A stretch of DNA of 64,000 nt. Origin: Kudoa neothunni (taxonomy: Eukaryota > Animalia > Cnidaria). Positions 5,917-62,989 of this stretch are shown here, piece after piece. Location: contig OZ199840.1 in assembly GCA_964304625.1 (NCBI GenBank), positions 209,309 to 273,308 on the forward strand, given 5' to 3'. How positions within the stretch are numbered: the stretch's first letter is position 1; each line of letters opens with the position of its first letter. A program made the position numbers and the translations under genes. The notes beneath the pieces are model-generated. The model did not search any database. It was not told where the DNA came from and saw only the letters and a list, made by a program, of their open reading frames with translations.

Positions 5917-8900
5917 TTAATCTCTTTTCTTCTTCAATACCACGATGCCAACTATTGCAATAACCATAACCACAGCAACGCATGCAATAATAATTCTAAA
6001 ATCAGTTAATTCAAATATCAGCATTTAAAAATGTTTACATTAGTTTGGTTTTATTCCTAAAAAATATTAAATTTGATAAAAGCATATTATTAAGCTCACC
6101 CTGAACTACTCTTTGCTCCTACGATATATAACATTAAATTACACTGTGAACAAATAATATACCTTGTTGTATGTCAGCACCGCCAAAAATTGTATCATCT
6201 TCAACACTGTAAACAGTCAAATAATAATCATTTCCATCAGGTAAATTATTTATTTTGAATTCTTTACAGGTCACAAAGGCAGCACATCTGTCTACGTTTT
6301 TTCTCATGCAAGATTTTACCACCGCATTAGACTTGACACTACTGTTACGTAACTCCCATCTGCATTTTGATTTATCGTTCATACTGGATGGAACTGTGGT
6401 GGTTACAATGAAACTGTCCCCATCACGTGTAATGACGACTGATATCAATTTTGAGGAGTCAGTTGGGTTTAATTGTGGTGCAGCTAATACAAGTTTCGTT
6501 TAAAAAATTCTTAATAGAGACATTAATTGTAATACTTGATTCTATAATATGCTCTTTTTGTGAAGATTTTCCAATAGCTGTGACTAAAATTTTGTATGTA
6601 TTTGCTGCTTCATACTCGGGAAATGTTATGGAACTGCAAAGGGGGTTTGAAGAACATGTGTTTGCGCTGTTCGCGACATCAGCAAGCTGTGTATCTGAAG
6701 TATCCGGAACTGAAGATTTCGCTATTGTCATTGGGCCACCATCTGCTACCATTGGCACAGCAATTCTAGCTATGTTGAGATCTGCGGAACTTAAACTAGG
6801 AGGGGCAGCTAAAGGGGGTGCTGGTGCTACTGGGGCGGTAACAGGTGTCGTTACTTTCGGCACCACAGGACATGTGTAATAGTCTGTGTAATCGTTACCA
6901 GTCTTCTTTTGTACGACATAACTGCAAGTTGCAGTTGGATCCACGGAATTTAATCGTGCCTTCAATGACAAACCATCCAATGTGATCTTATGTGTTATCG
7001 TTAATGTTGTTAATGCTATTAAGAATTTAAAGAGTAAATTATAATTTCAATAACCTGTTTGTATATTTGTGTAATCTTTTATGTCGTAATCCTTATGTGC
7101 AATCACCCTGATATCATAAGGTTTGTTTGGCTCGAGGTCTTCTATCGTAACTTGTTCACTGCAAATTCCTCTACATGGGGTGTTGCCATTGCATTTCGCG
7201 TGGAAAAAGCTATCTAATCCGGTTGGACTTATTAAATACTCACATGTAGGTTCATCTTTCTTTTGATCATTTGTAGCTGCGGTAGTAGCTATAGCTGTAA
7301 GAGAGACTGTCGTGTCTGTCTTTGTTGATGCGGTAGCTGAAAATGATTTGCTTGCTTCTTTTTCTTTATAATTCATTATTTTTTAATATAAGTATGATGA
7401 TTTACTTGTTCTTATGAATATATTTTCTTTATAATTCGTTGAAACACCATTTACTTCTAATGTGATCTCAATCATGTACGCTTTTCCCGGTGTAAGTCTT
7501 TGAATCACCAATTTTGTTGTGCAATCAGTTTTGCAACTGCCACTTTCTGTACTGGTATTATCGCATGTTGTTGTTGTTAAGGTGTCTGGTTTGATTTTGT
7601 CTGCTAAATAATGTTTAAGAGTACATTTATTAATTATTGGATCAGTTGTTCTTTTAAACAGGACAATATCAAACGACACTCCCTCATGTGTGTATTCTGA
7701 CAGGAATCCTGAAGTTGGTTCAGTAATTGCTAAATAAAATAAGAAAAAAATGCATATTAATATAAGGGTTACCAATTTTAGTTTGCTCGTAACCTATCAA
7801 ATTACCACTAGCAGGTTTTATGTCGTGATGCCTTGTTTGGATTAAAATTTTATAAATCTTTTTATCCGTGATACCATTAAGTTCGACGTACTTACATGGG
7901 GGCGTAACAATCTTTACCGGCACCACCACAAACGGACGTATATGATTGATCAGTTGCTGTATTCAAACCATCTTTTAGACGGAACAAACATATTTCAGAT
8001 GATAGGGAATTGGTAAACTTAACTCCGACTTTTCCTTCGGTTTTTTCTACAATATAAAACTGAGGCTCATACATGGCTATTTTTTCCTTCATATATTGAT
8101 TGGGCATATTGTAAAAGAAACCGGGATATTTTTCGCACCTCACCTCGTAATGCGGTAACAATAAATCAAAGTCAATTGCATTTGCTGTATTATAATTAAC
8201 ACAGTCTTCCCCCTTGGTACCATCTGCATATTTAATATCCTTATAATAAATAGGACAATCTACTGGTGCACATGTTTTTGCTGCCAATTTCAGTTTATTT
8301 GCATCGGCAGTACCTGTAACCATAGACACGCTAATTAGTGGACTAGCCAATAATGCTAAATTAAATTTCTTTCTATGATAAGTTAAATTTATTTACGTAT
8401 TGAATATCCGAACACTTTTGATCCAGCTCCACTAACTGCATTTTGAACATTAGCTGTTTCAATGTCAACATAAACATGTATGTATTTGGTTCTCGGTGAC
8501 ATCTTTTTGTAATCAAAGGTATTCGTATCAGTTTCACAGTCGACGACACATTTATTATTTTCAGCATCACTAACCTTAGCATTGCAGTTGTCGATGTTGG
8601 TAAACGCAGCTGGTGTCGTATTCGCAGCATTCGCTGCAATTTCTACTTCGTTTGATCGCCTTATAAGGCATTTTTTGCCAGCTCCATATTCAGAGCCTTC
8701 AAGTTTGATTTTAATTTCGTATGTGCTATCAGATGCTTTTTTAACAATCTGATATTTCAGAGTTTTATTTGGCGCTTCAGCTGCAGGAACAGCCGCAACT
8801 GCACCTGGAGGACTTGATATTACAACAGTATTTGCTATACCTGATATTAAAACACCTAAACTTACATTGGTATTAAAATTAACTCAGGAAGATACCTAAA

Positions 8901-8929
8901 ACAAGGTAGAGAAATCCAGCTATTTTCAT
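5917..8929 (-). CDS. Paralogue A of Cys-rich FN3-like type I membrane protein family (10 exons; one +1 frameshift)
   Basis: MKIAGFLYLVLG signal exon, same exon structure as copy C, ends IVVLKKKRD*. An extra G in the G5 run at 7898-7902 turns CYAPC into CYAPM*. Confidence 0.88.
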
Positions 8930-9133
8930 GGTTGACAATTAAATGAGCTACCAATTGATGGTTCGGAATACAATTGACCCGAATTCCACTCATCTGTGGA
9001 TATAATAATTCATTCATTGTCAGATAGCAAAACTTATGCTAGACAATAATTATTCAAGTTATTAAAAAATTTATCTAAACCAATTTTTTACCATCTAGCT
9101 CAAATCGGTGTGGTAGATTAATTACGACTTTAA

Positions 9134-10853
9134 CCCTCGAAGGACCGACCGTGCTGAAAAAACTTACGAGTGTAACAATGGGAATACCTCAGGTATCCCA
9201 GGTATTTTCTATGATAGCGATTGTATTCCCTCTTAATCTTTTTTAATCACAAAGAGTAAATTTATGGCTATTAAAAAAGTACTTGAATAATTAGACTAAT
9301 AAGTGAATCAATTTAAAATTTCTAGAACATTTCAATAAGCGTTACCTATATTATCTCTTACAATCCATCTTATTGTTAAATAATAAGATAGAACCACCTA
9401 ATCAAATCCGTTTCTATCGGTAGGAAATAAAATTAATGCTTATTAGTTCTTTTTTCACAAATAATAGGACAACCCTAACGAACCGCATGATTTACGCATA
9501 CGGTTGACCTCGGTAATCTATACGTTGATTGGTAGATTATATTTGATCTAATTCACTGAACGGAATAAAAATGTTATGGTCCAAGTTTTGATTAATGTTT
9601 ATTTTAGGGGTTTCTTGTTAAGCTATATTTTCCCAAAATTAGTTAATTCTTTCCTCTATGAAATTAATTTCGCGCCACCCTAATTAATCCTCCCGGGACC
9701 ATGCGGGGTCTTTCGAGATCCCATTTTCTTAAATCTGTGTTTTTACTTATCAAAATTCTAAATTCTAACTTATAGGTTCGTGTAATCTCCTATAATTATG
9801 TCGATTTTGTTTATATTATCTTTTGTAAAAAAGAGACGACATATATTCTGGTAAAAATATGTTCAATGTGTCGTCGGTTTATTAACACGCCTTAAAAATC
9901 ATGTCTTAAGCGAATTATCAAATTTTATCTTATTATATAGAAATAGAGTAATTATAATGATAGGAGTGAACACAAAAATACAAGGAGAACTTTTCGGTTT
10001 TGATTTCCCTCATGTTGTATAATAGAATTCCGATGATGTCAAAGGATAATTTTAGGGATTCACATTAATAATTACCAAAACGTGTTAATTCTCAATAATT
10101 AAGGGTGGTATCATATTTTTGATATGTTTTTATAACATTCATTAATGATCATAATTTATTAAAATATGACGCTTCAATTCGTCCTAAAACGCCCATATAT
10201 ATTTCCATTCTATATTCAATATTATCATAATGGATTAAATTATGCAATTTCGATTCATCTTAAAATATTTGATTAGTGTGGCGCAAAAGTAATTGAATGA
10301 AGAAAAGAATGTACTAATTTTGAGAAAATAGGCTAAAATGCAGTTTAGCCGAGAAAATATAACAATAAAAAACCCGCAAAATAAACATTAATTAAAACTT
10401 GAACCATAGCGTACATTTTTATTCCGTTCAGTGAATTAGATCAAATATTATCCACCAATCAACGTAGAAATTACCGAGGCCAACCGTGTGTGTAACCCTG
10501 TGGATGCATTGCCGTTTGTGTTATTATTCGCGAAAAGAATAACTAGGAAGCATTTATTTTATCTTCTGCCGATCGAAAATAATTTGATGTATTCGCATCT
10601 ATCTCATAACTTAGAAATTAGATAGATTGTAAGAGATTATGTTGGTAATGCTTATTGAAATGTTCTTGAAATTTCCTATTGATTCATTTATTAATTTGAT
10701 TATTCGGATATCATTTTGAATATTCATAAATATACTATTTGTAGATTTAAAAAATAAAGAGAAAATACAATCGCTATCATAGAAAACTTATGGAATACCT
10801 GAGATACCCCCATGGTTACTCACGTAAGTTTTTTGAGTACGGTCCTTCGAGGG
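9134..10853. mobile_element. Non-autonomous piggyBac-type element with about 490-bp imperfect inverted arms
   Basis: TTAA|CCCTCGAAGGACCG...CGGTCCTTCGAGGG|TTAA. Arms 9134-~9620 and ~10370-10853 are reverse complements. Paralogue B shows the empty site (GACTTTTAATGG at ~27047). Confidence 0.9.
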
Positions 10854-10859
10854 TTAATG

Positions 10860-11400
10860 GATGTAGTAGGAATATAAAGCAAAAAATATCAAAAAGAGTG
10901 AATGTTTCACTGTCACTTATCTTAAATAGGGGTTAACTTCCATCAGTTTTAATTGGTAAATTTCAAAATCCTGGGTGTTTTGACTGATTTAAACTTCTGC
11001 CGCATGAGTATTATTCAAAAAAACACAAGGATGATGTGTAGTAGATTTATAAACATAATTAGAAAGTTGGATCAAAGAATGATAGATGAGAGCAGAAAAG
11101 TTTTAATTTTGTTGGATTAATATCCTCTTCATCCCAAAAAATATTGATTTTTTTCAAATATCGAAATTATTTCCTGCAAAAAAAAAACAACTGATGTTCT
11201 ATCAACCTTAATTAAAGCATCATCAAATGCATTAAAAGTAAGGCAGGAATACACTGGCCAAACACACGGTTTTATGTGATGCTTTTATCACCGAAAAATA
11301 AACATTACCAGATTCAACCATGCCAATAACAAAACTTTGGGAGAGAATTACGCCAAAAACAATTCACAAAGAAATATTTTATGTATACATAATTAATCTT
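10860..11400 (+). mobile_element. pogo/Tigger DDE_1 transposase relic
   Basis: Degenerate VLIGKFQNPGCF..KLDQRMIDESRKVLILLD*YPLHP. Homologous to the minus-strand relic at 57.3-58.0 kb. Confidence 0.75.
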
Positions 11401-17545: not shown

Positions 17546-18947
17546 AAAGTCAAAAATATGACTTTCGTAATGAAAAAAACTATAGAATACCATTAAGATT
17601 ATATCCTATAAGCTATTATCTTGATAAAACGACAGCTGCTTGCAAAAAATTTGAGTACAGTGGGCCGGTGGGACTACCTTCAATAACTTCCCGTCGTTAG
17701 AAGAATGCAACAAAGAATGTACTTAAAATTAATTTTACACTCCTACAATAATTCTTTTGAATATGACTACGCTAGTCGCGTTGATGTTTGCACAGCTGAT
17801 CTTCAAGTCGATGGGACAAACGACTTCAATGTATATGAAAAAACTCAAGTAAACAGATATTATTTCAAGAGAGCTTCCGGTGGTGGTACAGGAGAATGCA
17901 AAACATATAATTATAAGGGATGTAATGAGCCAAATACTCATTTCCAAGTGGGGACGCATGTAATGGCAACTGTATAAGTAATTAATTATTTATTTTTACT
18001 GTTATTAATCGAAAATGCAACTAATTAATCTCAAAAAATACTTAACAGAGTTGATTGCCAAGCGTGAGTTATGTTGAACTCCGCTGCAACTGGTACCGAA
18101 AGAGAAATCAAGATCGTAAGGGACAAGGAAAAGTCCACTTGTGTTCATGCGATTGTAAACAAAAGAGATGGATTACGTGGAGTCTTTGATTTATTTTCTC
18201 AATGCCAAAAGAAGTGTCAGGGTAACTCTAAAAATTAAAATATATGAACTCAGTATGTAAATTTAGCTGATGACGCGGCTATTAAAAGATGCAAATATGA
18301 CCCATACCAACCAACCACCGAAGGGCACATGACAACCAAATATTATTATAATTCTACAAACCAGTTATGTATGCAAATGATGGCTGTTGATATTGAAGTA
18401 GATTCAACCAAAAATTGTTTCGATACAGCTGGAGAATGTATTAGTGCCTGTCCAGCTCGTATGTTTCTGTTATAACCTAAAATTATATTATTTAATTTTT
18501 AAAGTTAACGACGATCCAACAGAAACCAATTTTCCCGATATATCCCCCGTATGCAGCGAACCAAAAGAATCTGGTAATGGAAATGAAGCAAGCACACTAC
18601 CAAGATGGTACTATAATGATACACAAAAGGCGTGTAAACGATTTGCATATACTGGAATTGGTGGAAAAGCGAACAACTTTAAAAGCGAAGCTCTTTGCGA
18701 TTACCTTTGCATTGAAGGAATGACTGAAATTACTTTACCCGAACTAACAACTACCCCGGTACCTACAACTGAGACTACAACAACTTCTACAAGTGACGAC
18801 GAATCTGAATCAACCTCTTCCGATACCCCTCCTGACTCACAAGTGGCTGAGGATATCGATAACCATGAAGATAAAACAAGTGAGCACCAGCCCGCTGAAG
18901 CAGGGGAGGAAACCGAACAGCTGGATAATGCCCAACATACGATATAA
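17546..18947 (+). CDS. Multi-domain (5x) Kunitz/BPTI-like protein with Thr/Ser/acidic tail; disrupted as read, start not found
   Basis: One domain per exon, e.g. YYLDKTTAACKKFEYSG..NNFPSLEECNKEC, RYYF..ECKTYNYKGC..ACNGNC and CSEPKESGNG..PRWYYNDTQKACKRFAYTGIGGKANNFKSEALCDYLC. Frameshifts near 17663 and 17943, stop near 18065. Confidence 0.8.
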
Positions 18948-23852: not shown

Positions 23853-26852
23853 TTAATCCCTTTTCTTCTTCATTACCACGATACCAACTATTGCAATAAC
23901 CACAACCACAGCAACGCAAGCAATAATAATTCTAAAATCAGTTAATTCAAATATTAACATTTAAAAATGTTTACATTAGTTTGGTTTTATTCCTAAAAAA
24001 TATTAAATTTGATAAAAGCATATTATTAAGCTCACCCTGAACTACTCTTTGCTCCTATAATATATATAACATTAAATCACACTGTGAACAAATAATATAC
24101 CTTGTTGTATATCAGCACCGCCAAAAATTGTATCATCTTCAACACTGTAAACAGTCAAATAATAGTCATTTCCATCAGGTAAATTATTTATTTTGAATTC
24201 TTTACAGGTCACAAAGGCAGCACATCTGTCTACGTTTCTTCTCATGCAAGATTTTACTACCGCATTTGACTTGACACTACTGTTACGTAACTCCCATTTG
24301 CATTTTGATTTATCGTTCATACTGGATGGAACTGTGGTGGTTACAATGAAACTGTTCCCATCACGTGTAATGACGACTGATATCAATTTTGAGGAGTCAG
24401 TTGGGTTTAATTGTGGTACACCTAATATAAGTTTCGTTTAAGAAATTCTTAATAGAGACATTAATTGAAGCATTAATTGTAATACTTGGTTCTATAATAT
24501 GCTCTTTTTGTGAAGATTTTCCAATAGCTGTGACTAAAATTTTGTATGTATTTGCTGCTTCATACTCGGGAAATGTTATGGAAATGCAAAGGGGATTTGA
24601 AGAACAGGTGTTTGCGCTGTTAGGCATCCTCAGCAAGCTGTGTATCTGAAGTATCCGGAACTGAAGATTTCGCTGTTGATATTAGACCACCATCTGCCAC
24701 TATTGGCACAGCGATTCTAGCTATGTTGAGATCTGCTGAACTTATACTGGGAGGAGCAGCTGAAGGGGGTACTGGTGCTTGGTGCTACTGGGGCGGGTAA
24801 CAGGTGTCGTTACTTTCGATACCACAGGACATGTGTAATAGTCTGTGTAATCGTTACCAGTCTTCTTTTGTACGACATAACTACAAGTTGCAGTTGGATC
24901 CACGGATTTTAATCGTGCCTTCAATGACAAACCATCCAAGGTGATCTTATGTGTTATCGTTAACGTTGTTAATGCTATTAAAAAATTAAAGTGTAAATTA
25001 TAACTTCAATAACCTGTTCGTATATCTGTGTAATCTTTTATGTCGTAATCCTTATGTGCGATCACCCTGATGTCATAAGGTTTGTTTGGCTCAAGGTCTT
25101 CTATCGTAACTTGTTCGCTGCAAATTCCTCTGCACGGGGCGTTACCATTGCATTTCGCGTGGAAAAAGCTATCTAATCCGGTCGGACTTATTAAATACTC
25201 ACAGGTAGGCTCTTCTTTCTTTTCTCCCGTTGAAAGTCCGGCCATAGCTGTAAGAGAAATTGTTATGTCTGTTTTTGTAGGATCAGTAGTTCCATATGCT
25301 TTACCATCTCCGATTTCTTTACAATACATTATTTTATAAAATAAATATAATGATTCACTCGTTCTTATGAATATATGTTCTTTAAAACCTTGTGTAATAT
25401 CAGTGCCTTCAAATGAGATCTCAATCATGTAGGCTTCTCCCGCTGAAAGTCCCTGAATTACCAATTTTGAGCAATCAGTGTTGCAAGCGGTGCTGCTCTG
25501 GGTGGTACATATTGTGCCGGTCAGGGTGGCTGGCTTTGGTTTATCAGCAAAATAATGTTGAAGAGTACATTTGGTCATTTTTGGCGCTAGGGTCCTCTTT
25601 TAATGAGGATCCATCAAACGTTACACCATCTTTGACATAAGAAGAAAGCAACTCTCCAGCTGCTTCATTAATTACTAAAGAAAATAATAGAAAAATTCAG
25701 ATGAATGTAAGAATTACAAAACTTAGTTAGTTCGTAGCCTCGCAATACTCCACTAGTAGCTGTTATGTCGTGATGCCTTGTTTGGATTAAAACTTTATAA
25801 ATCTTTTTCCCCGCAATGCCATTCAGTTCGACGTACTTACAAGGGGCGTAACAACTCTTTCCGGTTCCACCACAAACTGAAATATATGATGGGTTGTTTG
25901 CTGCGTTCTGGCCATCTTTAAGACTGAATAGGCATATTTCAGATGATTGCGAATTAGTGAATTTGATTCCGACTTTGCCCGCAGTTTTGTCTACAATATA
26001 AAACTGGGGTTCGTAAATGGCTATTTTTTCCTTCATATATTGATTGGGCATTTTGTAAAAGAAGCTGGGATATTTACCGCACCTAACTTCGTAATGCGGT
26101 AACAATAAATCAAAGTCAACTTTATTATTATTGTTTTCGGAACTACAAGTGTTCCCTTTGGTACCAGTTTCGTATTCAATATCTCTATAATAAATAGGGC
26201 AATTTACAGGTGTACATGTTTTTGCTACGAATTTAAGCTTATTGTCGGTAGTGTCTGCAGACACCGTAATTTGTGGATTAGCCAATAATGCTAAATCCAT
26301 TTTATTATTTTGAAAAATTAAGTTGATTTACGTATTGAGTATCCGAATACTTTTGACCCTGCCCCGTTAATTGCGTTTTTAACATTATCTATGCGATCGC
26401 CCGACGAATACATATATGTATTTGGTTCTTGGTGATAGGTTGTCATAAGTGATTGCATTTCCATCAGTTGAACAATCGATAACACATTTATTAGTAGTAC
26501 TAGCATCATTAGGAGGGCAGATTGCGATGTCTACAAACGAATTTGCTGTTTCAGAAGTATTAGCTAAAATTTCTGCTTCTTTAGATCGCTTTATAAGGCA
26601 TTTTTGCTAGCACCATAATCAGAACCTCCGAGGTTGATTTTAATTTGGTCTGGGCTATTAGTTTCACCTTTCACAACCTGATACTTGAGCGTTTTCATTG
26701 GAGTTAGAGTAGGAGATGCCTCCGCAGCTGCAGAATCTTGACTTATAGCAGCATTGGTTTTTCTTGACGTTAAAACACCTGAATATACATCAGTACTAAA
26801 ATTAACTCATGATGATACCTAACGCAAGGTAGAGAAATCCAACTATTTTCAT
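23853..26852 (-). pseudogene. Paralogue B of the membrane protein family; at least 6 single-base indels (pseudogene or poor consensus)
   Basis: MKIVGFLYLALG start, all 10 exons present, ends VVMKKKRD*. Indels near 26602, 26401, 25580, 24796, 24779 and 24624, each changing a run length by one base. Confidence 0.8.
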
Positions 26853-38790: not shown

Positions 38791-41789
38791 ATGAAAATAA
38801 CCAGATTTCTCTACCTTGCTTTAGGTATCATCCCGAGTCTATTTTAATACTAATGTAAGTTTAGGTCTTTTGATATCATGCACAGTCAATGCTACCGGGC
38901 CTTCAAGTCCTCAAGCTGCACCTGCACCTGCGGCTCTAGCTCCAACGAAAACGCTGAAATACCAGATTGTGAAAGGTGCATCTAATAGCCCAAACCAAAT
39001 TAAGATCAAACTTGAAGGCTCTGAATATCCGAGGGGCAATAAGTGTGTTTTAAGGCGATCTAACGAAGCGGAAATCGCAGCCTCTACTACTGCTCCTCGT
39101 GTAACAACAGCTGAGTTTAAAGACATCTATAACTGCGCTGCTAATGATAGTGATAATGCTTCTAATCAATGTGTTGTCGATTGTAATACTGATGAGAATA
39201 AAATCACTTACGATATACTATCACCAAGAACCAAATACATATATGTCAACGTCGGCAGTGGCACAGATACTGTTAAAGAAAAAGTAAATGGAGCAGGATC
39301 AAAAGTATTCGGATATTCAATACGTAAATCAACTTAATTTAATACGAAAATAAATTAAATTTAGCACTATTGACCAACCCACATATCGCCGTTTCTACAG
39401 ACACTGCCAACAATAAGTTGCAATTCCTAGTCAAAACTTGTGCTCCCGTAAATTGCCCAATTTATTATAAAGATATCCAATATGAAGTTGGTACCAAAGG
39501 GGAAGATTGTAAAACTGGGAATACTGCAAACACAGTTGATTTTGATTTATTGTTACCTCATTACGAAGTGAAGTGCGGAAATTACCCCAGTTTCTTTTAC
39601 GATATGCCCAATCAATATATGAAGAAAAACATAGCCATTTATGAGCCTCAGTTTTATATCGTAACTAAAATTGAAAACAAAGTTGGAATTAAATTCACTA
39701 ATTCCTTGTCGTCTGAAATATGTTTGTTCCGTCTAAAAGATGGTTTGAATGCAGCAACTGATCAATCATATACGTCCGCTTGTGGTGGTGCCGGTAAAGA
39801 TTGTTACGCCCCATGTAACTACGTCGAACTCAATGGCATTGCGGGGAAAAAGTTTTATAAAGTTTTAATCCAAACAAGGTATCGCGACATAAAAGCTACC
39901 GGTGATAGTCCGGATGGTTACACGCAAACTAAATTCGGTAATTCTTACATTAAGACGAATTTTTCATTATTTTCATTAGCAATTACTGAACCAGCTGGAG
40001 GATTTCTTTCTACTTATACTAATGTTGGCGTTTCGTTTGACGGTACCCCATTTAAAGAAGGAACTAATCCACAAATTAATATATGTACTCTTAAACATTA
40101 TTTTGCTGATAAACCAAAGCCAGCCACCCCAACCGGCACAACATGTACCACTCAGAGCAGCAGCAGCACCACTTGCAACACTGATTGCTCAAAATTGGTA
40201 ATTGAGGGACTTTCAGCAGGAAAAGCGTACGTGATTGAGATTACATTTGGTGGAATTAATGATCCAAGTGGTTTCAAAGAACATATATTCATAAGAACAG
40301 GTAAATCAGTATATATATTTTATAAAATAACGAATTATATATAGCAAAGGGAACAGGTAAAGAGTATGGAACTACTGATCCTACGAAGACAGACACGACA
40401 GTCTCTCTTACAGCTATGGCTGGGCTTTCATCGGGAGAAAAGAAAGATGAACCTACCTGTGAGTATTTAATAAGTCCGACCGGATTAGATAGCTTTTTCC
40501 ATGCGAAATGCAATGGCAACACCCCGTGTAGAGGAATTTGCAGTGAACAAGTTACGATAGAAAACCTTGAGCCAAACAAACCTTATGACATCAGGGTCAT
40601 CGCACATAAGGATTACGACATAAAAGATTACACAAATATACAAACAGGTTATTGAAGTTATAATTTATTCTTTAAAATTTTTATAGCATTAACAACGTTA
40701 ACGATAACACACAAGATCACATTGGATGGTTTGTCATTGAAGGCAAGATTAAATTCCGTGGATCCAACTGCAACATGCAGTTATATCGTAAAGAAGAAAA
40801 CTGGTAACGATTACATAGATTATTACACATGTCCAGTGGTGTCGGAAGTAGCGACGCCTGTTACTGCCCCGGTAGCACCACCACCACCCGCTTCAGCTCC
40901 TACTTCCAGTTTAAGTTCTGCGGATCTCAACATAGCTAGAATTGCCATACCGACGACAGCAGATGATGGTCCAATGACAGCAGCGAAATCTTCAGTTCCG
41001 GATACTTCAGATACACAGCTTGCTGATGTCGCGAACAGCGCAAACACATGTTCTTCAAACCCCCTTTGCAGTTCCATAACATTTCCCGAGTATGAAGCAG
41101 CAAATACATACAAAATTTTAGTCACAGCTATTGGAAAATCTTCACAACAAGAGCATATCATAGAATCAAGTATTACAATTAATGTCTCTATTAAGAATTT
41201 TTTAAACGAAACTTGTATTAGCTGCACCACAAGTAAACCCAACTGACTCCTCAAAATTGATATCAGTCGTCATTACACGTGATGGGAACAGTTTCATTGT
41301 AACCACCACACTTCCATCCAGTATGAACGATAAATCAAAATGCAGATGGGAGTTACGTAATAGCAGTGTCAAGTCTAATGCTGTAGTAAAATCTTGCATG
41401 GGAAGAAGCGTAGACAGATGTACTGCCTTTGTGACCTGTAAAGAATTCAAAATAGATAATTTACCTGATGGAAATAACTATTATTTGACTGTTTACAATG
41501 CTCAAGATAATAATATTTTCGGTGGTGCTGACATTCAACAAGGTATATTATTTGTTCACAGTGTGATTTAATGTTATATATTGTAGGAGCAAAGAGTAGT
41601 TCAGGGTGAGCTTAATAATATGTTTTTATCAAATTTAACATATTTTAGGGATAAAACCAAACTTATGTAAACATTTTTAGATGCTAATATTTGAATTTAC
41701 TGGATTTTAGAATCATTATTGCATGCGTTGCTCTGATTGTGGTTGTGGCGGTAGTTGGAACCGTGGTATTGAAGAAGAAAAGGGATTAA
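38791..41789 (+). CDS. Paralogue C, intact, 869 aa type I membrane protein with Cys-rich FN3-like modules
   Basis: Exons 38791-38824, 38865-39323, 39365-39937, 39980-40300, 40345-40647, 40687-41169, 41222-41542, 41587-41605, 41649-41666, 41711-41789 (2610 nt, open frame, all GT-AG). Signal MKITRFLYLALGLLISC, TM IIIIACVALIVVVAVVGTVVL, tail KKKRD*. Confidence 0.93.
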
Positions 41790-42323: not shown

Positions 42324-42327
42324 TTAA

Positions 42328-44984: not shown

Positions 44985-47900
44985 TTAATCTCTTTTCTTC
45001 TTCAATACCACGATGCCAACTATTGCAATAACCACAACCACAGCAACACATGCAATAATGATTCTAAAATCAGTTAATTCAAATATCAGCACTTAAAAAT
45101 GTTTACATAAGTTTTGTTTTATTCCTAAAAAATATTAAATTTGATAGAAGCATATTATTAAGCTCACCCTGAACTACTCTTTGCTCCTACGATATATAAC
45201 ATTAAATTACACTGTGAACAAATAATATACCTTGTTGTATGTCAGCACCGCCAAAAATTGTATCATCTTCGACACTGTAAACAGTCAAATAATAGTTATT
45301 TCCATCAGGTAAATTATTTATTTTGAATTCTTTACAGGTCACAAAGGCAGTACATCTGTCTACGTTTCTTCTCATGCAAGATTTTACTACCGCATTTGAC
45401 TTGACACTGCTGTTACGTAACTCCCATTTGCATTTTGATTTATCGTTCATGGTGGCTGGAAGTGTGGTGGTTACAATGAAACTGTTCCCATCACGTGTAA
45501 TGACGACTGATATCAATTTTGAGGAGTCAGTTGGGTTTAATTGTGGTGCACCTAATATAAGTTTGATTTAAACAATTCTTAATAGAGACATTAATTGAAG
45601 AATTAATTGTAGTACTTGATTCTATAATATGCTCTTTTTGTGAAGATTTTCCGATAGCTGTGACTAAAATTTTGTATGTATTTACTGCTTCATACTCGGG
45701 AAATGTTATGGAACTGCAAAGGGGATTTGAAGAACAGGTGTTTGCGCTGTTAGTTGCACCAGCAAGCTGTGTATCTGAAGTATCCGGAACTGAAGATTTC
45801 GCTGCTGTCATTGGGCCACCATCTGCTACCATTGACACAGCAATTCTAGCTATGTTGAGATCCGCAGAACTTAAACTGGAAGTAGGAGCTGAAGCGGGTG
45901 GTGGTACCATTGGGGCGGTAACAGGTGTCGTTACTTTCGGCACCTCTGGACATGTGTAATAATCTGTGTAATCGTTACCAGTCTTCTTTTGTACCACATA
46001 ACTACAAATTGCAGTTGGATCCACGGAATTTAATCTTGCCTTCAATGACAAACCATCCAAGGTGATCTTATGTGTTATCGTTAATGTTGTTAATGCTATT
46101 AAAAATTTACAGAATAAATTATAACTTCAATAACCTGTTCGTATATCTGTGTAATCTTTTATGCCGTAATCCTTATGTGCGATCACCCTGATGTCATAAG
46201 GTTTGTTTGGCTCAAGGTCTTCTATCGTAACTTGTTCGCTGCAAATTCCTCTACATGGGGTGTTGCCATTACATTTCGCGTGAAAAAAGCTGTCCAATCC
46301 AGCCGGACTCACCAGATACTCACAGGTAGGTTCATCTTTCTTTTGTGAAGATTCAGTTGTGGTAGCAACCGTAGCTGTAAGAGAGACTGTCGTGTCTGTC
46401 TTTGTAGGGTCAGTAGTTCCATACTCTTTACTTGCTCCATTTTCTATATAATTTATTATTTTACAAAATAAATATATTGAATTACTTGTTCTTATGAATA
46501 TATATTCTTTAAAATCACTTGGAAGACTTTGGCCTGTAAATGTGATTTCAATCATGTAGGCTTTTCCCGCTGTAAGTCTTTGAAGCACTAACTTTGTTGA
46601 ACAATCAATTTTGCATTTGTTATCACCGGAACCTCCTCTGGAACTGTCAGTGTCGCATGTTGTTTCAGTTGGAGATCCTGATTTGATTATGTCTGCCAAA
46701 TAGTGTTTAAGAGTACATGTATTAATTTGTGAATTAGTTTCTCCTTTAAATGAGGTACTATCAAACTTAACACCAACATTGGTATATGAAGAAAGCAATC
46801 CGACGTCTTTTTCAGTAATCGCTAGGGAAAATAATAAAAAGTGCGTGTAAATATAAGGATTACCATATTTAGTTTGTTCATAACCTCTCAATGTACCGGC
46901 AGCGGCTTGAATGTCGTGATGCCTCGTTTGAATTAAAATTTTATAAATCTTTGTATCCGTGATGCCATTAAGTTCGACGTACTTACAAGGGGCGTAACAA
47001 CTCTTTCCGGTTCCACCACAAACTGAAATATATGATGGGTGGTTTGCTGCGTTCTGGCCATCTTTAAGACTGAATAGACATATTTCAGATGATTGCGAAT
47101 TAGTGAATTTAATTCCGATTTTTCCTTCAGTTTTGTCTACAATATAAAATTGAGGATTATAAATGGCTATGTTTTCCTTCATATATTGATTCGGCATATT
47201 GTAAAAGAAACCGGGATATTTTTCGCATCTTACTTCGTAATGCGGTAACAATAAATCAAAGTCAACTTTGTTCGCTTCATTTTCAGTATTACAATTTGTC
47301 GCCTTGGTACCTTCTGCGTATTTGATATCTTTGTAATAAATAGGACAATTTACAGGTGCACATGGTTTTGCTGCGAATTTCAACTGATGAACATCTGTAG
47401 ACACGGTAATTTGTGGATCAGCCAATAATGCTAAATTAAATTGATTTTATGTTAAATTAAATTGATTTACGTATTGAATATCCGAATACTTTTACTTCTG
47501 ATGTTCGACTTGTCCCTGTAACAGTCTGCACATCATTCCCGACATCGACTAATATGTATTTGGTCCTTGGCGAAAGCATTTCATAGGCGATTTTATTCTC
47601 ATCGGTATTACATGCGATGACACATCTACTGGTATCAGAATTATCGTTGTGGTTAGCGGCGCAGCTGGCAATATCTGCAAACGCAGCTGCTGGTACAGGA
47701 GGAGTACGAGCTGTCATTTCCGCTTCGTTAGATCGCATTATAATGCACCTTTTGTCACTTCCATAGTCAGAGCCTTCAAGTTTGATTTGAATATCGTCCA
47801 TGCCATCACTTTTCTTCACAATCTGATATTTTAACGTTTTCGTTCGAGCTTCAGCTACAGGTGCAGCTGCAACTGCAGCTGGAGGACTTGAACTTACAAC

Positions 47901-48003
47901 AGTATTGGCTGTGCTTGATATCAAAACACCTATGCTTACATTAGCATTAAAATTAACTCAGGAAAATACCTAAAACAAGGAAGAGAAATTCAGCTATTTC
48001 CAT
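44985..48003 (-). CDS. Paralogue D, apparently intact
   Basis: MEIAEFLFLVLG start, same 10-exon structure, ends IVVLKKKRD*. Introns 3 and 4 are 42 nt and stop-free, which produces the 432-aa read-through ORF. Confidence 0.92.
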
Positions 48004-57249: not shown

Positions 57250-58665
57250 TTCTTAAATCTTCTTGTTCTATAATCTGATTCAACTTTTTTATTACAGTTT
57301 TATATATTACTACCAAGCATTTTTGATTTTTAAAACAATTAAATATAATTTCTGGCGTAATACTCTCCCAATGTTTCATTAATGGCATGATTGAGTTTAG
57401 TGATGATTATTTTTCGATGATAAAAGCTTCACATAAAACCATGTGCTTAACTAGAGTAATCCTGCCTTATTTTTAAAGCATTTTATGATGTTTAAACTAA
57501 GGTTTGTAAAATATTGGTTGTTTTTTTTTTGTAGGAAAAAAATTTCGATATTTTATAAAAATCAATTGTAGTAATCCCCCAATCAACCGAGGCTGGGCTC
57601 CGCGCTAGCCCACTACATTACTGGGCGGAAATCCCCTAGACAACAACAATCAGGGTGATCACCATAGCTTCGTTTACTATAATAACTTAGTTGTATTATT
57701 CCTTAACACTAATCGTTTCCTCGCGCAAATACAACACCAATATTTTGGGGATCAAGAGGATATTGACCTACAAAATTAAAACTTTTCTATTCTCATTTAT
57801 AATGCTTTGGTTCAACTTTCTAATTATGTTTATAAATCTACTACACTTCATCCGTGGGGTTTTTTTGAATAATATCCACGTGGTAGATGTTTAACTCAGA
57901 TGAAACGTCTAAGATTCCGAAATTTACCAGTAAAAATTGATGTAAGTTTACCCCTATTTAAAAAAGAGTGACAGTAAACATTCACTCCATTTGGATATTT
58001 TTCGCCTAATATTCCGACTTCGTCCTATAAAACATAACTAATGTTTTGTACCTGCTCATAAAAGAAGGGCAGTTTCATCAATGTTTATGACTTCTTTAGG
58101 ATTACATCCCTTAACCAAATTAGTGTTTTCAAGGGATGAAATATCTGTATTCGCATCCTCATCATGAAACATTTTGAAAGATATTCCATATTTTAACGTG
58201 GAATCTGAAAACCACCCTTAACTAGACTATAAATTGGAAACTTCTTGTTTATTTGGAATATATAAAACAACTTCGATAATAACACACCTGAGCAGAACAT
58301 TATCATTCGACCATTGTTTAACCATCCAATCATACAGCTCACATCTGTATTTATAATTTCCCCGAAAAATGTGCCCTCTTTTTAGTTTCAATATCCGTAA
58401 TCCGTAATGTTGAATTTATTTTCATGTGAACAAATTCAATCAATTTTTAAATGACCTTAAACGTGACAATGTATTAATATTCAACATAGATAACTATGTC
58501 ATTCAATTTAAATTTAGAAATTGTGATTTTTCGACAACTTTCAATATTTTTATCGAATTTAATAATCAATGATTTCTGGTTTCTCTTAACTATTACGTTT
58601 TTGACAGGACACAATGAAGAAAACACTTCTATTTTTAAATAAATGGGGTTACTAAAACAACGCAA
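57250..58665 (-). mobile_element. pogo/Tigger relic
   Basis: ELYDWMVKQ..GWFSD..KYGISFKMFHDE HTH relic, then a DDE_1 relic homologous to 10860-11400. Confidence 0.72.
57567..57736. mobile_element. 170-bp candidate solo LTR
   Basis: TGTAG...CAACA ends with TCAAT/CCAAT flanks. Absent from the homologous Tigger copy at ~11140. Confidence 0.65.
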
Positions 58666-58827
58666 TAACGAGACATTATATATGAGTAATAAATTTTCTT
58701 ATTTTTTAATGTTAACGATGTTTAAGAAATGATAAGATAATAACAATACAAAAAACTAGGTTTCTCTCTAAAAAGAATAACGTAAAAATTTTGGAATTAC
58801 GCAGTATCCAATCTCGATTGTATTATA

Positions 58828-59505: not shown

Positions 59506-59978
59506 GTATTATTTAATATCTTTTTGGTTACAATGGAAAAATTACTAGGCTAATGCTTTTCGTAATCCTTCCGCGTTAGTACAATAATCAGAATGGGTAT
59601 ATGTTCGTTGAGACAAAATTTCGAAGTCTCGAGGAACCTATTCATTTAAGAAATGATGGGAAAAATATTAAATACTCCTTATAATAAATAGTATTACCAT
59701 TATTCTGCTAATGCTTAATATTTTACTTTAATGTTATCCCAAAAAACAATTAATCATGGAAAAACTTTAGATTTCATTAATGTTTTAAAGAATCCAACGA
59801 ATTTATATAAGCTAAATTGCAACAATATGGTTAAGACTAATTTTTAATAATGTGAATAGTTATTCCCTAGTCTAAGTTTTGCTAACTGACAATGAATGAA
59901 TCATTATATCCACAAATGTGTGAAATTCGGGTCAATTGTATCCCGAACCATCAATTGGTAGTTCATTTAATTGTGGCA

Positions 59979-62900
59979 ATGAAAATAACTAGATTTCTCT
60001 ACCTTGCGTTAAGTATCGTCGTGGGTCGATTTTAATGCTAATGTAAGTTTAGGTGTTTTGATATCAAGCACATCCAATACTGATGGAGGTTCAAGTCCTC
60101 AAGCGGCACCTGCACCTGCGACTCCTGCTCCAGCTCTAGCTCCAACAAAAACGCTGAAATACCAGATTGTGAAAGGTGAAACTAATAGCCCAAACCAAAT
60201 TAAGATCAAACTTGAAGGCTCTGAATATCCGAGGGGCAATAAGTGTGTTTTAAGGCGATCTAACGAAGCGGAAATCGCAGCCTCTACTACTACTTCTCGT
60301 GTAACAACAGCTGAGTTTAAAGACATCGATAACTGCGCAGCTAATGATAATGTTCCTAATAAATGTGTTGTCGATTGTAATACTGATGAGAATAAAATCA
60401 CTTACGATATACTATCACCAAGAACCAAATACATATATGTCAACGTCGGCAGTGACACAAATACTGCTAAAGTCAAAGTTAATGGAGCAGGATCAAAAGT
60501 ATTCGGATATTCAATACGTAAATCAACTTAATTTAATATGAAAATAAATTGAATTTAGCATTATTGACCAATCCACATATTGTTGTTTCTACAGACACTA
60601 CCAACAATAAGTTGCAATTCCTAGTCAAAACTTGTGCTCCTGTAAATTGCCCAATTTATTATAAAGATATTCAATATGAAGTTGGTACCAAAGGGGGAGA
60701 TTGTAAAACTGGGAATACAGCAAACCAAGTTGATTTTGACTTATTGTTACCGCATTACGAAATGAGGTGTAACAATTATCCCAGTTTCTTTTACAATATG
60801 CCCAATCAATATATGAAGGAAAGCATAGCCATTTATGAGCCTCAGTTTTATATTGTTAAAAAAACTGATAACAAAGTAGGAATTAAGTTCACCAATTCCC
60901 CATCGTCTGAAATATGCTTATTCAGTCTAAAAAATGGTCTAAATGCAGCAACCGATAAATCATACAAGTCTGTTTGTGGTGGTATTGGTAAAAGCTGTTA
61001 CGCTCCCTGTAAGGACGTTGTGTTAAATGGTATTGCAAACCAAGTAATTTACGGTATTTTGATCCAAACCAGACATCACAACATAAAAGCTACTGACAAT
61101 GATTTGGAAGGTTACAAAACAACTAAATTTAGTAATCCTTAGACTAATATGCATTTTGTATTATTTTCATTAGTCATTACTGAATCAGGTGCAGGTTTGC
61201 TTTCGGCTTATACCAATGTTGGTGTGACGTTTGATGCTCCCCAGTTAAAAGCGAGCTTAGATTCAAAAGTGACAAAATGTACTCTTAAGCATTATCTTGC
61301 TGATAAACCAGAGCCAACCTCCCTAACTGGTACAGCATGTGCCCAGAACGGTGGCGCTAGCGCCACTTGCGGCACTGAATGCGCAAAGTCGGTGATTCAG
61401 GGCCTTAACGCGGGAAAAGCATATATGATAGAAATTACACCTGAGACTATCGAGGATCCAAGTAGTTTCAAAGATCATATATTTATAAGAACAAGTAAAT
61501 TCTAACGTATTTATTGTATAAAATAACGAATTATATATAGCAAAGGGAACAGGTAAAGAGTATGGAACAACTGATCCTACAAAGACAGACACGACATTCT
61601 CTCTTACAGCTATGGCTGCTACCGCAACTGAAGCCGAACAAAAGAAAAGTGAACCTACCTGTGAATATTTGGTGAGTCCGGCTGGATTGGACAGCTTTTT
61701 CCACGCGAAATGCAATGGCAACACCCCATGTAGAGGAATTTGCAGCGAACAAGTTACGATAGAAGACCTTGAGCCAAACAAACCTTATGACATCAGGGTC
61801 ATCGCACACAAGGATTACGGCATAAAAGATTACACAGATATACGAACAGGTTATTGAAGTTATAATTTACTCTTTAAATTTTTAATAGCATTAACAACGT
61901 TAACGATAACACATAAGATCACCTTGGATGGTTTGTCATTGAAGGCAAGATTAAATTCCGTTGATCCAACTGCAACTTGCAGTTATGTCGTACAAAAGAA
62001 GACTGGTAACGATTACACAGACTATTACACATGTCCTGTGGTGCCGAAAGTAACGACACCTGTTACCGCCCCAGTAGCACCAGCACCCCCTTTAGCTGCT
62101 CCTCCTAGTTTAAGTTCCGCAGATCTCAACATAGCTAGAATTGCTGTGCCAATGGTAGCAGATGGTGGCCCAATGACAGCAGCGAAATCTTCAGTTCCGG
62201 ATACTTCAGATACACAGCTTGCTGATGTCGCGAACAGCGCAAACACATGTTCTTCAAACCCCCTTTGCAGTTCCATAACATTTCCCGAGTATGAAGCAGC
62301 AAATACATACAAAATTTTAGTCACAGCTATTGGAAAATCTTCACAAAAAGAGCATATTATAGAATCAAGTATTACAATTAATGTCTCTATTAAGAATTTT
62401 TTAAACGAAACTTGTATTAGCTGCACCACAATTAAACCCAACTGACTCCTCAAAATTGATATCAGTCGTCATTACACGTGATGGGGACAGTTTCATTGTA
62501 ACCACCACAGTTCCATCCAGTATGAACGATAAATCAAAATGCAGATGGGAGTTACGTAACAGTAGTGTCAAGTCTAATGCGGTGGTAAAATCTTGCATGA
62601 GAAGAAACGTAGACAGATGTGCTGCCTTTGTGACCTGTAAAGAATTCAAAATAAATAATTTACCTGATGGAAATGATTATTATTTGACTGTTTACAGTGT
62701 CGAAGATGATACAATTTTTGGCGGTGCTGACATACAACAAGGTATATTATTTGTTCACAGTGTGATTTAATGTTATATTTATCGTAGGAGCAAAAAGCAG
62801 CTCAGGGTGAGCTTAGTAATATTTTTTTATTTTATTCAATGTTTTTTAGGAATAAAACCAAACTTATGTAAACATTTTTAAATGCTGATATTTGAATTAA

Positions 62901-62989
62901 CTGATTTTAGAATCATTATTGCATGTGTTGCTGTGGTTGTGGTTATTGCAATAGTTGGCATCGTGGTATTGAAGAAGAAAAGAGATTAA
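59979..62989 (+). CDS. Paralogue E, apparently intact
   Basis: MKITRFLYLALS start, 10 exons with open frame, micro-exons GAKSSSG/NKTKLI, TM, tail KKKRD*. Confidence 0.92.

What the first reader, a model, noticed from the sequence alone, without database searches (positions are those of the whole stretch)
5917..62989. Paralogues are patchwork mosaics: closest relative switches every 100-400 bp
Seen: exon 2 and the start of exon 3 pair C with E (NSPNQIKIKLEGSEYPRGNKCVL; LQFLVKTCAPVNC). EVRCEKYPGFFYNM pairs A with D. The second half of exon 3 pairs A with C (NSLSSEICLFRLKDGLN..DQSYTS.CGGAGKDC) and B with D (NSQSSEICLFSLKDGQNAAN.PSYISVCGGTGKSC). Exon 4 pairs B with C (HYFADKPKPAT..CNTDCSKLVI) and A with D (TKLV.QRLT). 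Exon 5 pairs D with E (YLVSPAGLDS, DYGIKDYTDIR) and B with C (AMAGLS.GEKK). Exons 6-7 pair A with E (almost identical). PPPASAPTSS pairs C with D. A 12-nt insertion in intron 6 pairs B with D. No single duplication tree explains this. Inference: recurrent segmental gene conversion producing combinatorial variants.
Basis: partly seen in the sequence, partly recalled or inferred. Interest (0 to 1): 0.82.

Follow-up and report, generated by a model that had tools for sequence, protein, structure and literature searches.

The report
Mosaic surface-protein genes in Kudoa
Five neighbouring copies of a fibronectin-type surface-protein gene in a fish-muscle parasite (very probably Kudoa neothunni) are real patchworks of each other and of nine further copies nearby, made by repeated short gene conversion, a known way of shuffling variable surface proteins that has not been described in this group of animals.

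Summary

The mosaic is far beyond chance:
- PHI z = -19.5, with 0 of 2000 permutations reaching it.
- Seven segments carry mutually exclusive cherries, each with 100% bootstrap support.
- 100 simulations without recombination, keeping the regional rate profile, gave at most 3 segments and z no lower than -3.6.

Fourfold-degenerate sites follow the patches, differing at 2-8% inside and 27-44% outside. This is shared descent by recombination, not convergence. Breakpoints lie inside exons, not at introns.

The genome holds at least 33 copies. Fourteen of the 30 analysed lie in one 275-kb cluster, and most of the best donors are cluster members outside the window. Near-identical tracts are almost confined to that cluster (61 over 91 pairs against 2 over 224), regardless of orientation or distance.

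Copy B is a pseudogene, as are about a third of the family.

The gene encodes a signal peptide, a chain of FN3-like domains and a membrane anchor. The membrane-distal half is variable and the membrane-proximal half is homogenised.

Programmed antigenic variation is not shown. Read-level confirmation failed. Earlier unchecked notes of this scan report similar mosaics elsewhere in this genome.

The parts
5917..8929 (-). Copy A (c1), ATG to stop. The 10-exon gene is open except for one +1 change in a C5/G5 homopolymer at about 7897 in exon 3. This may be a real frameshift or a consensus error.
23853..26852 (-). Copy B (c2), a pseudogene. Frame-breaking indels lie near 26606 and 26402 (exon 2), 25585 (exon 4), and 24797, 24783 and 24624 (exon 6). 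It still shares patches with intact copies.
38791..41789 (+). Copy C (c3), intact and used as the reference model. Exons: E1 38791-38824, E2 38865-39323, E3 39365-39937, E4 39980-40300, E5 40345-40647, E6 40687-41169, E7 41222-41542, two micro-exons, E10 41711-41789. E2-E7 are in phase 1 with AG/GT borders. The product has a signal peptide, FN3-like modules, a Pro-rich linker, a transmembrane helix and a KKKRD tail.
44985..48003 (-). Copy D (c4), intact. Exons 3-5 and their two introns happen to read through as one 439-aa open frame (46130-47446), which was used as the search query.
59979..62989 (+). Copy E (c5), intact.
38920..39519 (+). Patch of C closest to E (94-98% identical): exon 2 and the start of exon 3. 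The matching stretch in E lies at about 60110-60715.
   Evidence: fourfold sites differ at 4/71
39520..40275 (+). Patch of C that is 98-100% identical to copy L002 (G000:C3:330550-333978). L002 lies 83 kb away in the opposite orientation and is itself a pseudogene. In this stretch C and E are only 67-79% identical.
40276..40970 (+). Further patches of C: L005-like (97.6%) at 40276-40487, then L002/L004-like (99-100%) at 40488-40970. Beyond them C is E/A-like at 40971-41376.
25840..25974 (-). B-D patch in the second half of exon 3 (97% identical; the cherry B+D has 100% bootstrap; the global tree is worse by 45.6 lnL). Its partner in D lies at 46986-47120. In the same columns A pairs with C.
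25031..25296 (-). Exon 5 segment in which B pairs with C (40365-40630) and D pairs with E (46152-46423 and 61561-61832). Both cherries have 100% bootstrap support.
6123..6941 (-). A-E tract of about 800 nt at 99.3% identity, covering exon 6, intron 6 and exon 7. Its partner in E lies at about 61963-62781. The two copies are 54 kb apart and inverted.
   Evidence: fourfold sites differ at 2/116, against 34/98 in the 5' half

Best explanation
The five genes belong to a family of at least 33 copies. The family encodes type I membrane proteins: a signal peptide, a chain of FN3-like four-cysteine domains, a Pro-rich linker, a transmembrane helix and a five-residue tail. The genome is very probably that of the myxozoan Kudoa neothunni.

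Fourteen of the 30 analysed copies lie within 275 kb on chromosome 3 (G000:C3:186-462 kb), in both orientations and separated by transposon-rich spacers; further split copies there bring the cluster to about 16. Within this cluster, short stretches of roughly 100-1000 nt have repeatedly been copied from one paralogue into another by homology-dependent, non-reciprocal repair, that is, ectopic (interlocus) gene conversion. Each gene is therefore a patchwork whose nearest relative changes along its length.

In the membrane-proximal half (exons 5-7 and their introns) conversion is frequent enough to homogenise the cluster, which is concerted evolution. In the membrane-distal half (exons 2-4) old, highly diverged sequence types persist and are reshuffled into new combinations, with most variability in the predicted loops. 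Pseudogenes such as copy B and L002 take part in the exchange.

Shown: the mosaic, its statistical significance, its restriction to the cluster, and the fact that synonymous and intron sites follow the patches. Inferred: the repair mechanism, surface exposure, and that the reshuffling serves to diversify a host-facing or cell-recognition surface.
For: Mosaic and incongruence. Null simulation.

Family-wide signal: PHI z is -42.8 for the 14 cluster copies and -23.0 for the 16 dispersed copies, with 0 of 500 permutations reaching either.

Patches of 98-100% identity sit inside pairs that are 80-88% identical overall, with flank identity dropping to 0.69-0.94.

Fourfold-degenerate sites differ at 2-8% inside patches and 27-44% outside, for the same pairs.

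Intron 6 and the 3' exons are two to three times more alike within the cluster than between cluster and dispersed copies (0.045 against 0.112). The 5' exons show no such structure, at 0.27-0.28 everywhere.

Near-identical tracts number 61 over 91 cluster pairs, 2 over 224 cluster-dispersed pairs and 6 over 120 dispersed pairs (Fisher p = 1.6e-39). Orientation has no effect (0.175 against 0.177) and distance within the cluster has none (rho -0.1).

Breakpoints fall inside exons.

Gene model and protein: signal peptide, transmembrane helix; six phase-1 exons with AG/GT borders and no stops; weak fn3 match; HMMER hits to annotated FN3 proteins, E about 1e-9 to 1e-5; exon 3 folds as two tandem FN3 domains; Foldseek probability 1.0 to cytokine-receptor modules. 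Variability is concentrated in loops, 0.95 against 0.53 bits. dN/dS is below 1 in nearly all windows, so the intact copies are under constraint.

Assembly: the statistics match the published K. neothunni assembly. These are 40.2 Mb, three chromosomes plus a circular mitochondrial contig, (TAAACC)n at one chromosome end, GC 30.4%, median intron 49 bp, built with hifiasm-meta from HiFi reads, QV 48.5, with the word 'polish' absent from the text (PMC12239612; own checks).
Against: - No single long read was inspected. The only reads reachable were short de Bruijn contigs from the same sample, which break inside the family and span no junction convincingly. Parasite coverage in the source data was only about 7x.
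- Non-reciprocity and the direction of transfer cannot be read from one haploid assembly.
- Some chimeras may come from unequal crossing-over or from duplication of already chimeric genes. C and E share an upstream flank, and B and E share a downstream flank.
- Many of the short segments in the 5' half of the copying model have only 75-90% identity to their 'donor' and may be noise.
- There is no evidence of expression or localisation.
- Overall dN/dS is below 1, so positive diversifying selection is not demonstrated.
Confidence: 0.85

Rival explanations
1. The chimeras arose mainly by unequal crossing-over and birth-and-death duplication. On this view each mosaic is a crossover product that was later duplicated, rather than the result of patch-wise conversion between fixed loci.
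For: The family is a tandem or inverted cluster with about 18-21 kb spacing. C and E share 84-88% identical upstream flank, and B and E share 74-81% identical downstream flank. So segmental duplication with flank exchange has certainly happened.
Against: A single crossover yields one switch and carries the downstream flank with it. The copies show 7 to more than 13 switches, and internal patches return to the original partner, as in C: E, L002, L005, L002, E. Half of the exchanging pairs are inverted, where a crossover would invert the interval, yet they exchange as often as direct pairs. Patches differ widely in age within a single gene.
Confidence: 0.07
2. The mosaics are artefacts: chimeric assembly, haplotype switching, or read correction across paralogues in a low-coverage metagenome-type assembly.
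For: Parasite coverage was about 7x, haplotypic duplication had to be purged, and the assembly was curated by hand (PMC12239612). My read check spanned no junction, and there is a hole at 39640-39773 in all four runs.
Against: - The assembly was built from HiFi reads, which (from my own knowledge of the platform, not checked here) are far longer than one 3.4-kb gene plus flanks. QV is 48.5 and the word 'polish' does not occur in the paper.
- Neighbouring patches differ by 20-35%, far too much for reads to be mis-overlapped or 'corrected' across copies.
- Most patches are 92-99% identical rather than 100%, so they carry later substitutions that an artefact cannot create.
- Short contigs assembled independently from the same sample match unique parts of C exactly, for example 39820-40123 and 38683-38967 with 0 differences.
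- Haplotype switching acts at read-length scale between alleles, not at 100-400 bp between paralogues.
Confidence: 0.03
3. No recombination occurred. A limited set of alternative motifs at each position is reached repeatedly by convergent or balancing selection, and regional rate differences mimic a mosaic.
For: The protein has conserved cysteine frameworks and variable loops. Rates differ strongly along the gene.
Against: Fourfold-degenerate sites and introns co-vary with the patches. Simulations that keep the regional rate profile but lack recombination never approach the observed signal.
Confidence: 0.01

Closest known systems
Segmental gene conversion in parasite variant-antigen families (Trypanosoma brucei VSG mosaics, Babesia bovis ves1, Plasmodium var/SICAvar, Anaplasma msp2). 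The comparison rests on my own knowledge of these systems; the review of common strategies is cited in PMC11792419.
   Same: A large, clustered family of surface-protein genes in which many members are pseudogenes. Short internal patches are exchanged between copies, producing mosaics. A variable exposed part is joined to a conserved anchoring part. The cluster lies near a chromosome (contig) end.
   Different: Those systems have a demonstrated expression site or mutually exclusive expression, and switching occurs within an infection. None of this is shown here. The fold here is FN3-like, and the organism is an animal (a cnidarian) rather than a protist or bacterium. The mosaics documented here are germ-line, on an evolutionary time scale.
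Interlocus gene conversion and concerted evolution in animal multigene clusters (MHC class I/II, KIR, globins, chicken Ig pseudo-V genes); from established knowledge.
   Same: Short-tract, non-reciprocal exchange among tandem or inverted paralogues. One gene part is homogenised while another stays diverse. Pseudogenes are involved in the exchange.
   Different: A different protein family and phylum. The density of patches is unusually high, at 13 or more per 3.4 kb. Exchange shows no dependence on distance or orientation across 275 kb.
Hydractinia allorecognition complex Alr family (PMC9546547).
   Same: A cnidarian example: a clustered family of type I membrane proteins built from Ig-like domains plus an Fn3-like fold. 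Single exons encode single domains. The extracellular parts are highly polymorphic, and 12 of 41 loci are pseudogenes.
   Different: Alr proteins have V-set and I-set domains and long cytoplasmic tails with ITAM or ITIM motifs. The Kudoa proteins are chains of FN3-like four-cysteine modules with a five-residue tail. No sequence homology between the two was tested or found here.
Proposed variant surface protein families of the myxozoan Sphaerospora molnari (VSP-like, RIFIN/STEVOR-like; bioRxiv 10.64898/2026.02.11.705288).
   Same: The same parasite phylum, with expanded lineage-specific membrane protein families proposed to vary the surface. That paper states that the molecular mechanism of myxozoan antigenic variation is unknown.
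   Different: The folds differ (Cys-rich CXXC proteins, two-transmembrane RIFIN-like proteins). That work reports no recombination or gene-conversion analysis and no FN3 family.
Class I cytokine-receptor homology module and IL-17RA ectodomain (fold level only).
   Same: The exon 3 model is two tandem FN3 domains with conserved cysteines. The top Foldseek hits (E 3e-5, probability 1.0) are common gamma chain, IL-17RA, gp130 and IL-7R alpha.
   Different: Sequence identity is 7-14%. Global TM is about 0.3 because the domain orientation differs. No WSXWS motif was looked for. This is a fold resemblance, not membership.

Membership tests
Fibronectin type III (FN3) domain superfamily | Match to the Pfam fn3 model (PF00041) at or above the gathering score. 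| tested here: not met
   Exon 5 of C scores 21.8 bits (E 2e-4) against a cut-off of 25. The other exons give no hit.
Fibronectin type III (FN3) domain superfamily | Beta-sandwich fold of about 90-100 residues, similar to solved FN3 domains. | tested here: met
   The AlphaFold2 model of exon 3 (pLDDT 80, all-beta, two domains) gives 46 PDB matches at E <= 0.001. All matches listed are tandem-FN3 receptors or fibronectin itself, with probability 0.95-1.0. This is a prediction, not a solved structure.
Fibronectin type III (FN3) domain superfamily | Sequence-level relation to annotated FN3 proteins. | tested here: met
   phmmer against 1.84 billion representatives hits DSCAM-like/titin-like and 'fibronectin-like' mollusc proteins at E 1.4e-9 and 1.4e-5. 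The language-model neighbours are all fn3 clusters.
Interlocus (ectopic) gene conversion | Significant phylogenetic incongruence along the alignment, beyond what rate heterogeneity explains. | tested here: met
   PHI, segment trees with AU tests, and no-recombination simulations.
Interlocus (ectopic) gene conversion | Internal patches bounded on both sides by non-donor sequence, with the flanks of the locus retained. | tested here: met
   C reads E, L002, L005, L002, E. A reads L013, E, L013. Patch identity is 97-100% against flank identity of 0.69-0.94. Homology among the five copies ends within about 0.1-0.5 kb of the gene, apart from the limited C-E and B-E flank similarity.
Interlocus (ectopic) gene conversion | Silent sites (synonymous, intronic) share the patch history. 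| tested here: met
   Fourfold sites differ at 2-8% inside patches and 27-44% outside. Intron 6 is homogenised within the cluster.
Interlocus (ectopic) gene conversion | Non-reciprocal transfer: the donor stays unchanged. | not testable with these tools
   This needs outgroup or population data, or parent-offspring comparison. Only one haploid assembly is available.
Programmed antigenic variation system (VSG/var/vlsE type) | An archive of silent or defective donor copies. | tested here: inconclusive
   12 of 30 copies show a defect, and at least 5 of them (B, L002, L010, L028 and L030 or L025) have frame-breaking indels. Whether they act as donors is unknown.
Programmed antigenic variation system (VSG/var/vlsE type) | A dedicated expression site or mutually exclusive expression, with change during an infection. 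| not testable with these tools
The source paper reports very few parasite RNA reads.
Exon shuffling through symmetric phase-1 exons | Switch points coincide with introns or exon borders. | tested here: not met
   All six breakpoints among the five copies lie 12-317 nt inside exons. Of 45 clean switches in the family, 35 lie in exons.

The most novel reading that the evidence does not exclude
The 275-kb cluster is a diversity-generating locus used during the parasite's life. On this reading intact genes are rewritten by 100-1000-nt conversion patches drawn from neighbouring intact and pseudogene copies. Different plasmodia or lineages within a host, or successive generations, would then display different membrane-distal FN3 surfaces. 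That would be the first molecular mechanism for antigenic or recognition variation in Myxozoa, and an animal counterpart of VSG, ves1 or msp2 mosaic formation.
Probability: 0.1. Interest if true: 0.85.

Novelty: new member of a known kind. Interest (0 to 1): 0.6.

Why it matters
Myxozoans are economically important fish parasites, and how they deal with host recognition is largely unknown. A 2026 preprint on another myxozoan states that antigenic variation has been observed but that its molecular basis is not known.

This work documents a concrete, undescribed family in a Kudoa genome: membrane-anchored FN3-type proteins with a hypervariable distal half, a homogenised proximal half, a pseudogene fraction, and dense conversion mosaics confined to one cluster. 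The library searches and reading of the assembly paper found no description of it.

That gives specific loci to test for expression switching, for diversity between isolates and for surface localisation. It is also a clean animal example of short-tract ectopic conversion that does not depend on orientation or distance over hundreds of kilobases.

As a mechanism, however, it is a known kind of event.

Tried and rejected
- **Read-level confirmation.** The only holders were four runs of one sample, kept as short de Bruijn contigs. These contigs break inside the family, give no junction-spanning record, and leave a hole at 39640-39773. This was uninformative rather than negative. It did show 10-20 times higher word depth over the 3' half, as expected if that half is shared by many copies.
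- **Organism identification from proteins.** COX1 on the mitochondrial contig is cut by 8 TGA codons, so it yields only short pieces. A search with HSP70 gave only about 78% identity to assorted animals and no close relative. The organism was instead identified by matching assembly statistics and the telomere motif to PMC12239612.
- **Pfam.** It gives only a sub-threshold fn3 hit.
- **The large protein search.** It found 29 hits. The family-specific ones are unnamed ENA or Logan fragments at 30-45% identity, so no named family exists.
- **Exon shuffling at the symmetric phase-1 introns.** Rejected, because breakpoints lie within exons.
- **Convergent selection and rate heterogeneity.** Rejected.
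- **Distance decay or an orientation effect within the cluster.** Not found.
- **Strong positive selection.** Not found. dN/dS is about 1 only at the Ala/Pro-rich N-terminus of exon 2 and in the Pro-rich linker of exon 6.
- **Spliced model.** All queries were single exons, or the natural read-through frame of D, given by reference. The joined-model step was left out.

Full report
**What is in the window.** A self-comparison finds five blocks of about 3.4 kb that are 78-85% identical overall. Three are on the minus strand (5687-9131, 23634-27052, 44769-48195) and two on the plus strand (38593-42022, 59810-63217).

Reading copy C directly and checking it computationally gives a 10-exon gene:
- a 34-nt exon with the ATG and most of a signal peptide;
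- six large exons (E2-E7), all in phase 1, all with AG/GT borders and open frames, separated by introns of 39-52 nt;
- two juxtamembrane micro-exons;
- a last exon encoding a transmembrane helix and the tail KKKRD.

**The observation.** In sliding windows the closest pair changes repeatedly, and the swings are large. C-E falls from 97% to 67%, B-D from 97% to 62%, and A-E rises to 100%. Among 323 parsimony-informative sites, all ten possible pairings have 12 or more supporting sites, and these sites come in runs.

**Is it more than chance?**
- The PHI statistic lies 14-20 standard deviations below its permutation mean, with 0 of 2000 permutations reaching it.
- A run-length test in the style of GENECONV is significant for most pairs.
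- A parsimony segmentation gives seven segments with different best trees.
- Maximum likelihood on those segments gives mutually exclusive cherries at 100% bootstrap: C+E in the first segment, B+D in the second, A+D in the third, then B+C together with D+E.
- The AU test rejects the best single tree in three segments, for example by 45.6 lnL units over 135 columns.

The segments were chosen from the data, so I also simulated 100 alignments on the best tree without recombination, keeping the observed regional rate profile. These gave a mean of 1.06 segments (maximum 3), a parsimony gain of at most 1, and a mean PHI z of -0.7 (minimum -3.6). The observed values are 7 segments, a gain of 42, and z of -19.5.

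**Recombination rather than convergence.** For the same pair of copies, fourfold-degenerate third positions differ at 2-8% inside the shared patches and at 27-44% outside them. Introns follow the exons around them. Selection for a limited set of protein motifs cannot produce this.

**The wider family.** The whole genome (G000, 40.26 Mb in four contigs) holds 46 matches, at least 33 of them near full length. Fourteen of the 30 analysed copies lie at C3:186-462 kb, around and including the window.

With 30 copies aligned, the closest relative of each window copy is, over much of the gene, a cluster member outside the window. Copy C, for example, reads as follows:
- E-like (94-98%) at 38920-39519;
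- 98-100% identical to L002 at 39520-40275;
- L005-like (97.6%) at 40276-40487;
- L002/L004-like (99-100%) at 40488-40970;
- E/A-like at 40971-41376.

L002 lies 83 kb away on the opposite strand.

Near-identical tracts have a median length of 346 nt and reach 965 nt. There are 61 over the 91 cluster pairs, 2 over the 224 cluster-dispersed pairs, and 6 over the 120 dispersed pairs (Fisher p = 1.6e-39). Within the cluster, neither orientation (0.175 against 0.177) nor distance (rho -0.1) matters. PHI is significant for cluster copies (z -42.8) and also for dispersed copies (z -23.0), so older exchanges involved those too.

**Polarity along the gene.** Exons 2-4 are very diverse, differing by 0.20-0.31 per site. 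In exons 2 and 4 this exceeds the divergence of their own introns, and it is equally high within the cluster and between cluster and dispersed copies. Exons 5-7 and intron 6 are two to three times more alike within the cluster than outside it, which is concerted evolution. dN/dS is below 1 almost everywhere. It is near 1 only in the Ala/Pro-rich N-terminus and the Pro-rich linker.

**Where the switches fall.** All six breakpoints among the five copies lie 12-317 nt inside exons. Of 45 clean family-wide switches, 35 lie in exons. The symmetric phase-1 exon structure would permit exon shuffling, but it is not what made these mosaics.

**Pseudogenes.** Eighteen of the 30 copies are fully open with intact splice sites, and 12 have defects. 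Copy B has six frame-breaking indels, near 26606, 26402, 25585, 24797, 24783 and 24624. L002, L010 and L028 also have several. Copy A has a single extra base in a five-base homopolymer at 7897. At the published consensus quality (QV 48.5) only about 1.4 errors are expected across all 30 copies. The clustered defects are therefore real, while A's single change may not be.

**What the protein is.**
- Pfam gives only a sub-threshold fn3 hit in exon 5.
- An exhaustive HMMER search finds 29 relatives. The family-specific ones are unnamed fragments from metagenome or run assemblies at 30-45% identity. The named ones are ordinary FN3 proteins.
- An AlphaFold2 model of exon 3, built on a 28-row alignment (A1), has pLDDT 80 and is two tandem beta-sandwiches.
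- Foldseek places that model with tandem-FN3 receptor ectodomains at probability 1.0.
- Family variability is concentrated in the predicted loops, at 0.95 against 0.53 bits (p = 0.001).

With the signal peptide and the C-terminal anchor, this is most simply a surface protein whose membrane-distal domains vary.

**Whose genome.** The window also carries piggyBac-type and MULE transposase ORFs and an ORF with a Kunitz domain. HSP70 is closest to animal sequences but only at about 78% identity. The mitochondrial contig reads TGA inside COX1.

The assembly statistics match the published Kudoa neothunni genome, recovered from yellowfin tuna HiFi data (PMC12239612). The matching features are:
- 40.26 Mb in three chromosome-sized contigs of 17.15, 12.04 and 11.05 Mb, plus an 18.2-kb mitochondrial contig;
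- (TAAACC)n at exactly one chromosome end;
- GC of about 30%;
- introns of about 40-50 nt.

That paper does not mention this family: the terms 'paralog', 'surface', 'fibronectin' and 'gene famil' do not occur in it.

**Could it be an artefact?** The assembly was built with hifiasm-meta from HiFi reads at about 7x parasite coverage, and the word 'polish' does not occur in the paper. From my own knowledge of the platform, HiFi reads are far longer than one gene plus its flanks. Adjacent patches differ by 20-35% from the alternative copies. Most patches are 92-99% identical rather than 100%, so they carry later substitutions.

My one read-laying run reached only short contigs from the same sample. 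They match unique parts of C exactly but break within the family and span no junction. I put the artefact reading at about 3%.

**Mechanism and comparison.** The best-supported mechanism is recurrent short-tract ectopic gene conversion among clustered paralogues, with some contribution from duplication and unequal crossing-over (flank sharing between C and E and between B and E).

This is the same kind of process known from the variant-antigen families of protist and bacterial parasites, and from MHC, KIR and Ig clusters in animals. A cnidarian comparator with clustered, exon-per-domain, polymorphic membrane proteins and many pseudogenes is the Hydractinia Alr complex (PMC9546547).

Three things are new here: the phylum, the protein family, and the density and cluster-restricted nature of the exchange. 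One thing is not shown: any programmed or somatic use, or even expression. For another myxozoan, variant surface families have recently been proposed and the mechanism declared unknown. This locus would make that question testable in Kudoa.

**Earlier notes of this scan.** Unchecked first-reader notes describe the FN3-like four-cysteine phase-1 module, polarised divergence, juxtamembrane micro-exons, and similar mosaics in neighbouring and distant windows of this genome. I confirmed the module, the phases, the polarity and the micro-exons on my own data. The distant mosaics were not examined.

Noticed in passing
window 52110-53546 (+); 43532-44341 (-); 27-1407 vs 42321-43693: There is a full-length piggyBac-type transposase ORF (DDE_Tnp_1_7, E 3e-64). 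A truncated copy sits in the 2.7-kb spacer between the tail-to-tail genes C and D. A third, 70% related copy lies at the window start.
   Followed up: partly
window 54813-55958 (-): A MULE/Mutator-type transposase ORF. A 2026 preprint reports that MULEs are expanded in myxozoans.
   Followed up: no
window 18444-18947 (+): An ORF with a Kunitz/BPTI protease-inhibitor domain (E 2e-16) lies between copies A and B.
   Followed up: no
window 9130-9632 and 10353-10857; 10859-11359 vs 57349-58025: A 500-nt inverted repeat (79.5% identical) lies immediately upstream of copy A. An adjacent 500 nt recurs at 82% identity near the MULE ORF. These may be the long terminal repeats of a non-autonomous DNA transposon.
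   Followed up: no
window 23853-26852 (-) and 7897: Copy B is a pseudogene with six frame-breaking indels. Copy A has one extra base in a five-base homopolymer in exon 3, which could be a consensus error.
   Followed up: yes
G000:C3:186356-188409 and 193187-194512: A family copy is split at query position about 1357-1360 by roughly 4.8 kb of inserted DNA, probably a transposon insertion.
   Followed up: no
G000:C3:1359883-1475088: A second cluster holds a related subfamily, four matches at 69-71% nucleotide identity. An earlier first-reader note reports mosaic paralogues there as well.
   Followed up: no
G000:C2:12039536-12040069: The telomere-like repeat (TAAACC)n is present at only one contig end in the whole assembly. 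This matches the published description and helped identify the genome.
   Followed up: yes
window 39365-39937 (exon 3 of C): The predicted fold is two tandem FN3 domains. The best structural matches are class I cytokine-receptor modules and IL-17RA. This is a fold-level lead only.
   Followed up: partly
window 39640-39773: None of the four runs has a contig at 97% or more over this stretch, while neighbouring bins are covered. It is probably a low-coverage or filtering gap, but it remains unexplained.
   Followed up: no
L036 (Logan SRR33849685 contig, 2166 nt) and L037 (ENA ERZ795007): Contigs from other public samples encode exon-3-like modules at about 44-45% identity. The family therefore exists in at least one other, unidentified organism.
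   Followed up: partly
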